Positions 43,759 through 45,262 of a stretch of DNA of 64,000 bases are shown in pieces. The stretch lies in sequence record MK799832.1, one strand, 5' to 3'. Under the pieces are notes generated by a model. That model had not been told where the DNA came from. It ran no database searches and saw only the letters and a list, made by a program, of their open reading frames with translations. The translations under genes were made by a program, and so were the position numbers. How positions within the stretch are numbered: the stretch's first letter is position 1; each line of letters opens with the position of its first letter.

Positions 43759-44450
43759 CATACGACTTTTCTTTCGCACATTCACCAGAAGGTTTTGATA
43801 ATCACATTGACAAATCTATTCGGGGTTACTCAAACCTTCTAGAGGATACTGTATCGTTCTCTCGATACTTTGTGGAAGATCATACCAAAGTCGTTGATGT
43901 GGGTTGTTCTACTGGTAAACTTACCAAGATGATCCTTGCCAATAATCCAAATCGTAGACATACACAATACGTAGGTGTTGAACTTGCAGGTGGGTTCTAT
44001 GATGATCTTGATGATAGGTACAAAGAAATTCGTAAAGACTATCCTTGGGCTATTCTTGAGTTTGTACGTGGTAATATCACCAACTACGAGTTCAAGAACT
44101 GTTCTCTGGTGACTTCACTGTTCACTCTTCAGTTCATGCCCAAGACAACTCGTCAAGAGACCATCGATAAAATCTACGAGGGTCTTAATGAGGGTGGTGC
44201 ATTCATCTTTGCAGAGAAGTTGATGTGTCAAAATGCGTTCTTCCAAGAACTGTTGACATTCAATCACTACGATTACAAACGTAAATCTTTTACTCCAGAA
44301 GAGATCATGGATAAAGAGAAGGAACTTCGTGATATGTTGAAACCAAATACTTGGGAAGAACTCAAGTCTATGATATGGTGTGCTGGTTTCAAAGATTGTC
44401 AGATCTTCTGGAGAAATCATCAGTTCGTTGGAGTCATTGCTATTAAATGA
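43755..44450 (+). CDS. cmoA: CmoA-like carboxy-S-adenosyl-L-methionine synthase
   Basis: F...I..SIRGYSNL, VVDVGCSTG, SLFTLQF, GLNEGGAFIFAEK, HYDYKR, EIMDK, AGF; colinear with the CmoA family over the whole length. Confidence 0.8.
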   Translation: MTYDFSFAHSPEGFDNHIDKSIRGYSNLLEDTVSFSRYFVEDHTKVVDVGCSTGKLTKMILANNPNRRHTQYVGVELAGGFYDDLDDRYKEIRKDYPWAILEFVRGNITNYEFKNCSLVTSLFTLQFMPKTTRQETIDKIYEGLNEGGAFIFAEKLMCQNAFFQELLTFNHYDYKRKSFTPEEIMDKEKELRDMLKPNTWEELKSMIWCAGFKDCQIFWRNHQFVGVIAIK

Positions 44451-45262
44451 TTGATTTTATTCTCACCGATATTATCTCCCAAGAAGTCCCTACAGATGAT
44501 GTGGGGATTTTGTTGTCTGGAGGTGTAGATAGTTTAAGTCTCGGTTTTGCTGCAGCCCGTGCGGGTAAAAAAGTTGATGCATATACTTTTCATCTTGAGG
44601 ATGATAAGTCATATGATGCATTGAAAGCAGAAGAAGTATCAGCCAAGTTTGGGTGGAACTGTAAGACTATTGTAGTTCCTAAAGATAATCTCGCTCAAGA
44701 CTTTCTTCGTCTAGTGAAAGACTATGATTGTAGAAAGAAGACACACTTTGAGTGTACCTTCCCCTTTCTCTATGTTTTTCCTGAAATCACCAATAAGTAT
44801 CTCTTGAGTGGTATTGGTGCTGATGGGTATTACGGTGTCAGTAAGAAAGCAGTTCTTCACTTCAAAGAACCGAAAGAAAGGTTTGATCAGTTCAGACGTA
44901 ATTATTTCATGCCACATAACGTAACTGGATTTCGACAGATTGAACAGTTATGTAATGAAAGAGATATCAAACTTGTACATCCCTACATCTACCATGATGA
45001 TGTAAGTGAATTCTTCTTCAAGTATGATTGGTATGAGCTCAACAAACCAAAACAAAAACAGATTGTCAGAGATGCTTTTGAGGATGAGTTTAGTTGTATC
45101 AAAGCGGTGAAGGACCATATCAATCTTCAACTTGGGTCTAATATTGATCACTTGTTTGAAACACTCTTAGATGATAAGATGCTAAATAATCGTGGTAGGA
45201 AGAGGGTCATGGATCTTGCCTCTGACTACGCATCATCTGGACAAGGAACACTTCCATTATGA
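44447..45262 (+). CDS. Stand-alone asparagine-synthetase-like ATP-dependent amide ligase (no glutaminase domain)
   Basis: PP-loop LLSGGVDS, LSGIGADGYYG, LVHPY; only 271 aa. Confidence 0.8.
   Translation: MIDFILTDIISQEVPTDDVGILLSGGVDSLSLGFAAARAGKKVDAYTFHLEDDKSYDALKAEEVSAKFGWNCKTIVVPKDNLAQDFLRLVKDYDCRKKTHFECTFPFLYVFPEITNKYLLSGIGADGYYGVSKKAVLHFKEPKERFDQFRRNYFMPHNVTGFRQIEQLCNERDIKLVHPYIYHDDVSEFFFKYDWYELNKPKQKQIVRDAFEDEFSCIKAVKDHINLQLGSNIDHLFETLLDDKMLNNRGRKRVMDLASDYASSGQGTLPL

What the first reader, a model, noticed from the sequence alone, without database searches (positions are those of the whole stretch)
44447..45262. Stand-alone asparagine-synthetase domain without glutaminase: unknown amine acceptor
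Seen: 271 aa starting almost directly at the PP-loop (SGGVDS), with no N-terminal Cys/Ntn glutaminase domain. Inference: it cannot release ammonia from glutamine, so it must use free ammonia or another amine, and its substrate is plausibly a DNA-borne carboxylate. The same genome carries speD (12440), so a polyamine acceptor is conceivable, but that link is speculative.
Basis: partly seen in the sequence, partly recalled or inferred. Interest (0 to 1): 0.7.

Follow-up and report, generated by a model that had tools for sequence, protein, structure and literature searches.

The report
Known phage DNA glycine ligase CmoY

Summary
The ORF at 44447-45262 (+, 271 aa) is real. Its PP-loop SGGVDS lies at residues 24-29. 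It has no glutaminase domain and no room for one, because a stop codon directly precedes the ATG and the upstream gene is a complete cmoA. The window is Synechococcus phage S-B05 (MK799832.1, 62001-126000). The gene is 100% identical in DNA and protein to S-B43 147774-148589, which is SpCmoY (A0A514ABJ0). Yang et al., Nat Commun 2025 (PMC12783734), showed the pathway. CmoA makes carboxy-SAM. CmoX (PDB 8YF3) puts a carboxymethyl group on C5 of cytosine in GC sites. CmoY with ATP and glycine converts 5cxmC in DNA to the glycine amide 5gcxmC, which was found in native phage DNA while 5cxmC was not. The acceptor is glycine, not ammonia or a polyamine. The claimed speD at 12440 is the end of the gp45 sliding-clamp gene. 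My structure model and fold search confirm a stand-alone AsnB-type synthetase domain. Verdict: correct observation, already known, low interest. Side notes: sister phage RN05-S lacks cmoY, an Erwinia phage CmoX homologue carries an intein, and the S-B05 record has a probably artefactual junction inside its DNA polymerase gene.

The parts
43755..44450 (+). cmoA, the carboxy-S-adenosylmethionine (Cx-SAM) synthase that supplies the carboxymethyl donor
   Evidence: NCBIfam TIGR00740 CmoA E 2.8e-33, below the equivalog cutoff. Protein identical to S-B43 A0A514ABH6. Activity shown in PMC12783734.
44447..45262 (+). cmoY, a stand-alone PP-loop, AMP-forming amide ligase that joins 5cxmC in DNA to glycine with ATP, giving 5gcxmC
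   Evidence: 271-aa ORF. 100% nt and aa identity to S-B43 147774-148589, which is A0A514ABJ0 SpCmoY. Pfam PF00733. Fold matches the AsnB-type synthetase domain. Biochemistry in PMC12783734.
44516..44533 (+). PP-loop SGGVDS (residues 24-29), the ATP pyrophosphatase signature
   Evidence: Translation. S24, G25, G26, D28 and S29 are invariant in 26 family members. It aligns with AsnB SGGLDS.
44807..44836 (+). SGIGADGYYG (residues 121-130), aligned with the AsnB S-G-E-G-S-D-E segment. D126 is retained, and the AsnB Glu (E348 in literature numbering) is Ile here.
   Evidence: Translation. hhalign of the family against E. coli AsnB. G122, D126 and G130 are invariant.
45259..46377 (+). cmoX, the DNA cytosine C5-carboxymethyltransferase that makes the 5cxmC substrate at GC sites
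   Evidence: Pfam PF00145 E 5.9e-53. Full-length match to PDB 8YF3, E 3e-252. One synonymous base difference from S-B43. SPPC at 45541-45552 and R350 at 46306-46308.

Best explanation
The gene encodes CmoY, the last enzyme of a three-gene phage DNA hypermodification pathway. CmoA converts SAM and prephenate to carboxy-SAM. CmoX transfers the carboxymethyl group to C5 of cytosine in GC dinucleotides of DNA. CmoY is a stand-alone asparagine-synthetase-type PP-loop domain. It uses ATP to activate the carboxylate of 5-carboxymethylcytosine in DNA, presumably as an acyl-adenylate, and the amino group of free glycine then attacks to give the amide 5-glycylcarboxymethylcytosine (5gcxmC). Shown by published experiment on the identical protein: product formation depends on ATP, glycine and enzyme; 5cxmC is replaced by the m/z 343.1 product in E. 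coli co-expressing CmoX and CmoY; 5gcxmC is present and 5cxmC absent in native phage DNA. Inferred only: the adenylate intermediate, how the base is reached in duplex DNA, and the biological role of evading host restriction or defence.
For: DNA and protein are identical to S-B43 cmoY at the coordinates given in the paper's own source data. The neighbour matches the CmoX crystal structure 8YF3 over its full length. The cmoA-cmoY-cmoX genes overlap by ATGA at both junctions, which suggests (inference) one translationally coupled unit. The PP-loop and the Mg-binding Asp are conserved across the family. The fold is the AsnB / beta-lactam synthetase synthetase domain. The same trio in the same order occurs in a Staphylococcus phage. 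In the window 12.3% of cytosines lie in GC; multiplied by the paper's 75% site occupancy this gives about 9%, which fits the reported ~10% of C modified.
Against: Nothing found here contradicts it. Some gaps remain. The paper's text reports no test of other amines, and its no-glycine control monitored only the glycine-adduct mass transition. About a quarter of GC sites in native DNA are not accounted for. The experiments used S-B43 rather than S-B05, although the three proteins are identical.
Confidence: 0.95

Rival explanations
1. CmoY uses free ammonia and makes 5-carbamoylmethylcytosine, the simplest reading of an asparagine synthetase without its glutaminase.
For: The glutaminase domain is absent. 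The paper's no-glycine control monitored only the 343 to 227 transition, so an ammonia product would not have been seen in that channel. The paper itself proposes ammonia for a different ligase cluster that does carry a glutaminase domain.
Against: In E. coli, where ammonium is abundant, co-expression abolished 5cxmdC and gave the glycine adduct. Native phage DNA contains 5gcxmdC. The AsnB Glu that aligns with CmoY position 123 is Ile in CmoY.
Confidence: 0.02
2. CmoY ligates a polyamine such as putrescine or spermidine to 5cxmC, linked to a phage speD.
For: None from the tools. Polyamine-modified bases exist in other phages, for example alpha-putrescinylthymine (from my own knowledge).
Against: The supposed speD at 12440 is the gp45 sliding clamp, and no SAM decarboxylase is annotated in the window. 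The observed adduct mass and the in-vitro requirement fit glycine. The paper's modelling finds residues that bind the glycine carboxylate.
Confidence: 0.01
3. It is a metabolic gene that makes asparagine from free aspartate and ammonia.
For: Pfam Asn_synthase hit and database names such as 'asparagine synthetase B' or 'putative asparagine synthase'.
Against: TIGR01536 scores 44.7 bits against a cutoff of 267.1. The Pfam match covers only about half of the profile. The gene sits between cmoA and cmoX in distant phages. Direct activity on DNA has been published.
Confidence: 0.01

Closest known systems
SpCmoY of Synechococcus phage S-B43 (UniProt A0A514ABJ0; Yang et al., Nat Commun 2025, PMC12783734)
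   Same: Identical 271-aa protein and identical 816-nt gene, with the same flanking cmoA and cmoX.
   Different: Only the host record differs: S-B05 rather than S-B43. In this 2.6-kb block the two records differ by one synonymous base in cmoX.
Asparagine synthetase B / human ASNS, C-terminal synthetase domain (PDB 1CT9, 6GQ3, 8SUE)
   Same: Same fold (TM by query 0.70-0.75). Same PP-loop and same Asp in the S-G-x-G-x-D segment. ATP-dependent amide formation through an acyl-adenylate in AsnB.
   Different: No N-terminal Ntn glutaminase domain. About 15% identity. The AsnB Glu (E348 in the literature) is Ile. The carboxylate sits on a DNA base rather than on free aspartate, and the nucleophile is glycine rather than tunnelled ammonia.
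Beta-lactam synthetase and carbapenam synthetase (PDB 1MC1, 1MBZ, 1Q19)
   Same: These are the best structural matches (E 4e-11 to 5e-10). They are AsnB-family enzymes that have given up glutamine-derived ammonia as the nucleophile (the mechanism is from my own knowledge).
   Different: They keep a vestigial N-terminal domain (about 500 aa, TM by target 0.41). They close an intramolecular lactam on a small molecule, whereas CmoY makes an intermolecular amide on DNA.
tRNA lysidine synthetase TilS (own knowledge, not tested here)
   Same: A PP-loop enzyme that activates a nucleic-acid base with ATP and attaches an amino acid.
   Different: It acts on tRNA C34 at C2 rather than on a side-chain carboxylate. 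It belongs to a different PP-loop subfamily and gave no significant match in any search here.

Membership tests
CmoY (phage 5cxmC-glycine amide ligase, PMC12783734) | Sequence identity to the characterised enzyme A0A514ABJ0 | tested here: met
   0 nt and 0 aa differences from S-B43 147774-148589, the coordinates the paper's source data give for cmoY.
CmoY (phage 5cxmC-glycine amide ligase, PMC12783734) | Encoded next to CmoA and a CmoX that carries SPPC and Arg350 | tested here: met
   cmoA 43755-44450 and cmoX 45259-46377. SPPC and R350 verified.
CmoY (phage 5cxmC-glycine amide ligase, PMC12783734) | ATP- and glycine-dependent conversion of 5cxmC in DNA to 5gcxmC | not testable with these tools
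   Reported for the identical protein in vitro, in E. coli and in native phage DNA.
CmoY (phage 5cxmC-glycine amide ligase, PMC12783734) | Pocket residues that bind the glycine carboxylate (paper's Supplementary Fig. 8) | not tested
   The figure is not held as text and the model coordinates are not exposed. The point holds trivially because the sequences are identical.
Asparagine synthetase B (glutamine-hydrolysing, EC 6.3.5.4) | N-terminal class II (Ntn, Cys) glutaminase domain | tested here: not met
   Residue 2 is Ile, a stop codon lies directly upstream, and the fold covers the synthetase domain only.
Asparagine synthetase B (glutamine-hydrolysing, EC 6.3.5.4) | Score at or above the TIGR01536 equivalog cutoff | tested here: not met
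   44.7 bits against a cutoff of 267.1.
Asparagine synthetase B (glutamine-hydrolysing, EC 6.3.5.4) | PP-loop SGGxDS and the synthetase-domain fold | tested here: met
Asparagine synthetase B (glutamine-hydrolysing, EC 6.3.5.4) | Catalytic Glu of the S-G-E-G-S-D segment (E348 in literature numbering) | tested here: not met
   It aligns with Ile123, and the position varies across the family (I, W, T, M).
Beta-lactam / carbapenam synthetase | Two-domain architecture with a vestigial N-terminal domain, about 500 aa | tested here: not met
   271 aa; TM by target about 0.41.
QueC / other PP-loop ATPases | Score above the Pfam or NCBIfam cutoffs | tested here: not met
   PF06508 scores 18.3 against a cutoff of 22; TIGR00364 scores 17.4 against 150.3. 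The matches cover the PP-loop region only.

The most novel reading that the evidence does not exclude
Whether the carboxymethyl handle is capped with glycine may be a polymorphic, recombination-exchanged trait among phages of one host. RN05-S infects the same Synechococcus MW02. It lacks cmoY cleanly and carries a cmoX allele that is only 83% nt / 89.5% aa identical, inside otherwise 93-100% identical flanks, yet it keeps SPPC and R350. This predicts bare 5cxmC as its final base, and suggests that 5cxmC and 5gcxmC are alternative camouflage states selected by different host defences. A lesser possibility is that CmoY accepts other alpha-amino acids in its native host.
Probability: 0.4. Interest if true: 0.35.

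Novelty: already known. Interest (0 to 1): 0.1.

Why it matters
The pathway itself matters. It is the first natural 5-carboxymethylcytosine, and it shows a carboxylate handle being used for amide hypermodification of phage DNA. That credit belongs to the 2025 paper. The small remainder of value lies in the natural cmoY-less relative and in the amine specificity, which has not been tested.

Tried and rejected
1. A sequence search of the PDB with CmoY found nothing at E<=0.01, so only the fold search placed it.
2. I looked for speD at window 12440 and at S-B05 genome position 12440. The first is the sliding clamp and the second is head and baseplate genes. I did not scan the rest of the S-B05 genome for speD.
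3. From sequence alone the protein is acidic overall (pI 5.8), with conserved basic residues K97/K98, K133/K134, R150, K204, R251 and R253.
4. hhalign against AsnB did not extend past CmoY residue 212, so the equivalent of AsnB Lys449 could not be assigned.
5. I considered laying reads on cmoY itself. I dropped this because nine metagenome runs already hold 99-100% of its sampled words.
6. Literature searches for further work on CmoY or on Cx-SAM in phage DNA returned only the one paper.

Full report
OBSERVATION. The PP-loop SGGVDS is at residues 24-29, window 44516-44533. There is no room for a glutaminase domain. Residue 2 is Ile, a TAA stop lies directly upstream in frame, and the upstream gene (43755..44450) is a complete protein of another family that overlaps the start by ATGA. 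Pfam Asn_synthase scores E 1.7e-14 but covers only profile positions 19-182 of 354. The NCBIfam AsnB equivalog scores 44.7 bits against a cutoff of 267.1. A database search found 468 homologues. The listed ones are almost all 263-287 aa (one is a 160-aa fragment), and none lists a glutaminase Pfam domain.

IDENTITY. The block 43755-46377 is 100% identical to Synechococcus phage S-B05 (MK799832.1) and differs from S-B43 (MN018232.1) by a single base. Locus coordinates of S-B05 62001-111000 coincide with window coordinates, so the window is S-B05 62001-126000. CmoA and CmoY are identical in DNA and protein between the window and S-B43, and CmoX differs by one synonymous base. The neighbouring 372-aa protein matches PDB 8YF3 over its full length at E 3e-252.

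WHAT IS KNOWN. Yang et al., Nat Commun 2025 (PMC12783734), studied exactly these three S-B43 genes. Their source data give cmoY = A0A514ABJ0 at S-B43 147774-148589, which is the stretch identical to window 44447-45262. They showed four things.
- SpCmoA makes carboxy-SAM from SAM and prephenate.
- SpCmoX transfers the carboxymethyl group to C5 of cytosine in GC motifs. Arg350 contacts the carboxylate in the 1.9 A structure.
- Co-expressing SpCmoX and SpCmoY in E. coli abolishes the 5cxmdC peak (m/z 286.1) and gives m/z 343.1, the glycine amide 5gcxmdC. Purified SpCmoY makes this product on 5cxmC DNA only when ATP, glycine and enzyme are all present.
- Native S-B43 DNA contains 5gcxmdC and no detectable 5cxmdC, with about 10% of C and about 75% of GC sites modified.
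The masses fit by simple arithmetic (my own calculation): dC plus a carboxymethyl group gives [M+H]+ 286.1, adding a glycyl residue (+57.02) gives 343.1, and loss of deoxyribose gives 227.1.

INDEPENDENT CHECKS MADE HERE.
- A 26-sequence family alignment shows these residues invariant: S24, G25, G26, D28, S29, G122, D126, G130, S132, K133, K134, R150, K204, H224, Q228, R251, R253 and others.
- The AlphaFold model is confident (pLDDT 90.3, pTM 0.88).
- Foldseek places residues 2-270 on the synthetase half of beta-lactam synthetase (1MC1, 1MBZ), carbapenam synthetase (1Q19), human ASNS (8SUE, 6GQ3) and E. coli AsnB (1CT9). TM by query is 0.70-0.77. TM by target is about 0.4, because the targets have an extra N-terminal domain.
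- hhalign of the family against E. coli AsnB aligns CmoY 16-212 with AsnB 227-438. The PP-loops coincide. CmoY S121-G-I-G-A-D126 lies on AsnB S-G-E-G-S-D, so the Asp is retained but the AsnB Glu (E348 in literature numbering) is Ile.
- The same three genes in the same order occur in Staphylococcus phage vB-SscS-F1.
- 12.3% of cytosines in the window lie in GC dinucleotides. With the paper's 75% occupancy this predicts about 9% of C modified, in line with the reported ~10%.
- The exact cmoY allele is common in nature: nine metagenome runs hold 99-100% of its sampled words.

The acceptor is glycine, not ammonia or a polyamine. The speD support fails. Window 11775..12440 is the gp45 sliding clamp (PF09116, PF02916), and no SAM decarboxylase is annotated anywhere in the window. 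Genome position 12440 of S-B05 lies in head and baseplate genes.

RESIDUAL UNCERTAINTY. The paper's text mentions no test of other amines. Its no-glycine control monitored only the glycine-adduct transition. About a quarter of GC sites are not accounted for. The adenylate intermediate and the way the base is reached in duplex DNA are inferred by analogy, not shown. I could not inspect the model's surface because coordinates are not exposed. By sequence the protein is acidic (pI 5.8).

COMPARISON AND NOVELTY. The protein is a member of the CmoY family by identity. It works like the synthetase domain of AsnB but is not an asparagine synthetase B: it has no glutaminase domain, scores below the equivalog cutoff, and has replaced the catalytic Glu. 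Its best structural relatives are beta-lactam and carbapenam synthetases. The finding is therefore already known, and interest is low.

NOTICED IN PASSING.
(a) Synechococcus phage RN05-S infects the same host. It has cmoA followed after a 25-nt spacer by cmoX, with no cmoY and no CmoY match anywhere in its genome at E<=1e-3. Its cmoA is 97% nt identical, but its cmoX is only 82.9% nt and 89.5% aa identical, while the flanking genes are 93-100%. The divergent tract runs from about 44250 to 46260, with an amino-acid cluster at CmoX 246-269. SPPC and R350 are kept. This looks like a recombination tract that carried cmoY in or out, and it predicts bare 5cxmC in RN05-S.
(b) Erwinia and Dickeya jumbo phages (Alexandravirus) have a CmoY homologue (33-34% identity) next to a CmoA homologue (30% identity, E 4e-28) and a DUF1611 protein. 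In Erwinia phage Alexandra, about 16 kb from its CmoY homologue, lies a 709-aa CmoX homologue that keeps the Arg equivalent to R350. It is interrupted at the catalytic Cys by an intein (SPP|CFTEDT ... VVHN|CKGFS). The Pfam intein matches are below their cutoffs.
(c) The S-B05 record has a junction at window 38591/38592 inside the family B DNA polymerase gene. The ORF here has 626 aa, against 831 aa in RB11-B. The missing 5' 629 nt lie at S-B05 196112-197312 on the other strand. In four metagenomes no contig bridges the junction. Contigs from the right run on into the RB11-B-type 5' polymerase sequence, and contigs from the left run on into other sequence. The S-B43 record likewise loses identity with the window left of 41937, inside the helicase gene. 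These are probably assembly artefacts or record-specific rearrangements. Contigs show presence, not absence, so this is not proof.

Noticed in passing
L002 (Synechococcus phage RN05-S, PV261924.1) 3001-4840, compared with window 43755-46377: This sister phage of the same host lacks cmoY cleanly, with a 25-nt spacer between cmoA and cmoX. Its cmoX allele is only 83% nt / 89.5% aa identical inside flanks that are 93-100% identical. SPPC and R350 are kept. The pattern looks like a recombination tract (about window 44250-46260) and predicts bare 5cxmC as the final base.
   Followed up: partly
window 38406-40458 (junction at 38591/38592): The family B DNA polymerase ORF lacks its first ~210 codons compared with RB11-B (626 aa against 831 aa). 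The missing 5' part lies at S-B05 196112-197312 on the opposite strand. No contig in four metagenomes bridges the junction, and the contigs continue as in RB11-B. This is probably a misassembly or inversion in the S-B05 record.
   Followed up: partly
window 41937 compared with L001 (S-B43, MN018232.1) 2183: The S-B43 record loses identity with the window left of 41937, inside the DnaB-like helicase gene. S-B43 annotates a 939-nt 'primase-helicase' where the window has 1374 nt. This is a second record-specific breakpoint in an essential replication gene.
   Followed up: no
L010 (Erwinia phage vB_EamM_Alexandra, MH248138.1) 142-2271: A 709-aa CmoX homologue is interrupted exactly at the catalytic Cys of SPPC by an insert of about 356 aa with intein hallmarks (CFTEDT at its start, VVHN followed by Cys at its end). 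It keeps the Arg equivalent to CmoX R350. The Pfam intein and Hint matches are below their cutoffs.
   Followed up: partly
L003 (Dickeya phage vB_DsoM_AD1, MH460463.1) 3132-5831: Jumbo phages of Erwinia and Dickeya place a DUF1611 protein between a CmoA homologue and a CmoY homologue. In Erwinia phage Alexandra the C5-transferase homologue lies about 16 kb from its CmoY homologue. This may be a variant hypermodification with an extra step.
   Followed up: partly
No SAM decarboxylase is annotated in the window.
   Followed up: yes
whole window: Both GC (observed/expected 0.62) and CG (0.48) dinucleotides are depleted. GC is the CmoX target motif, and 12.3% of cytosines lie in GC.
   Followed up: no
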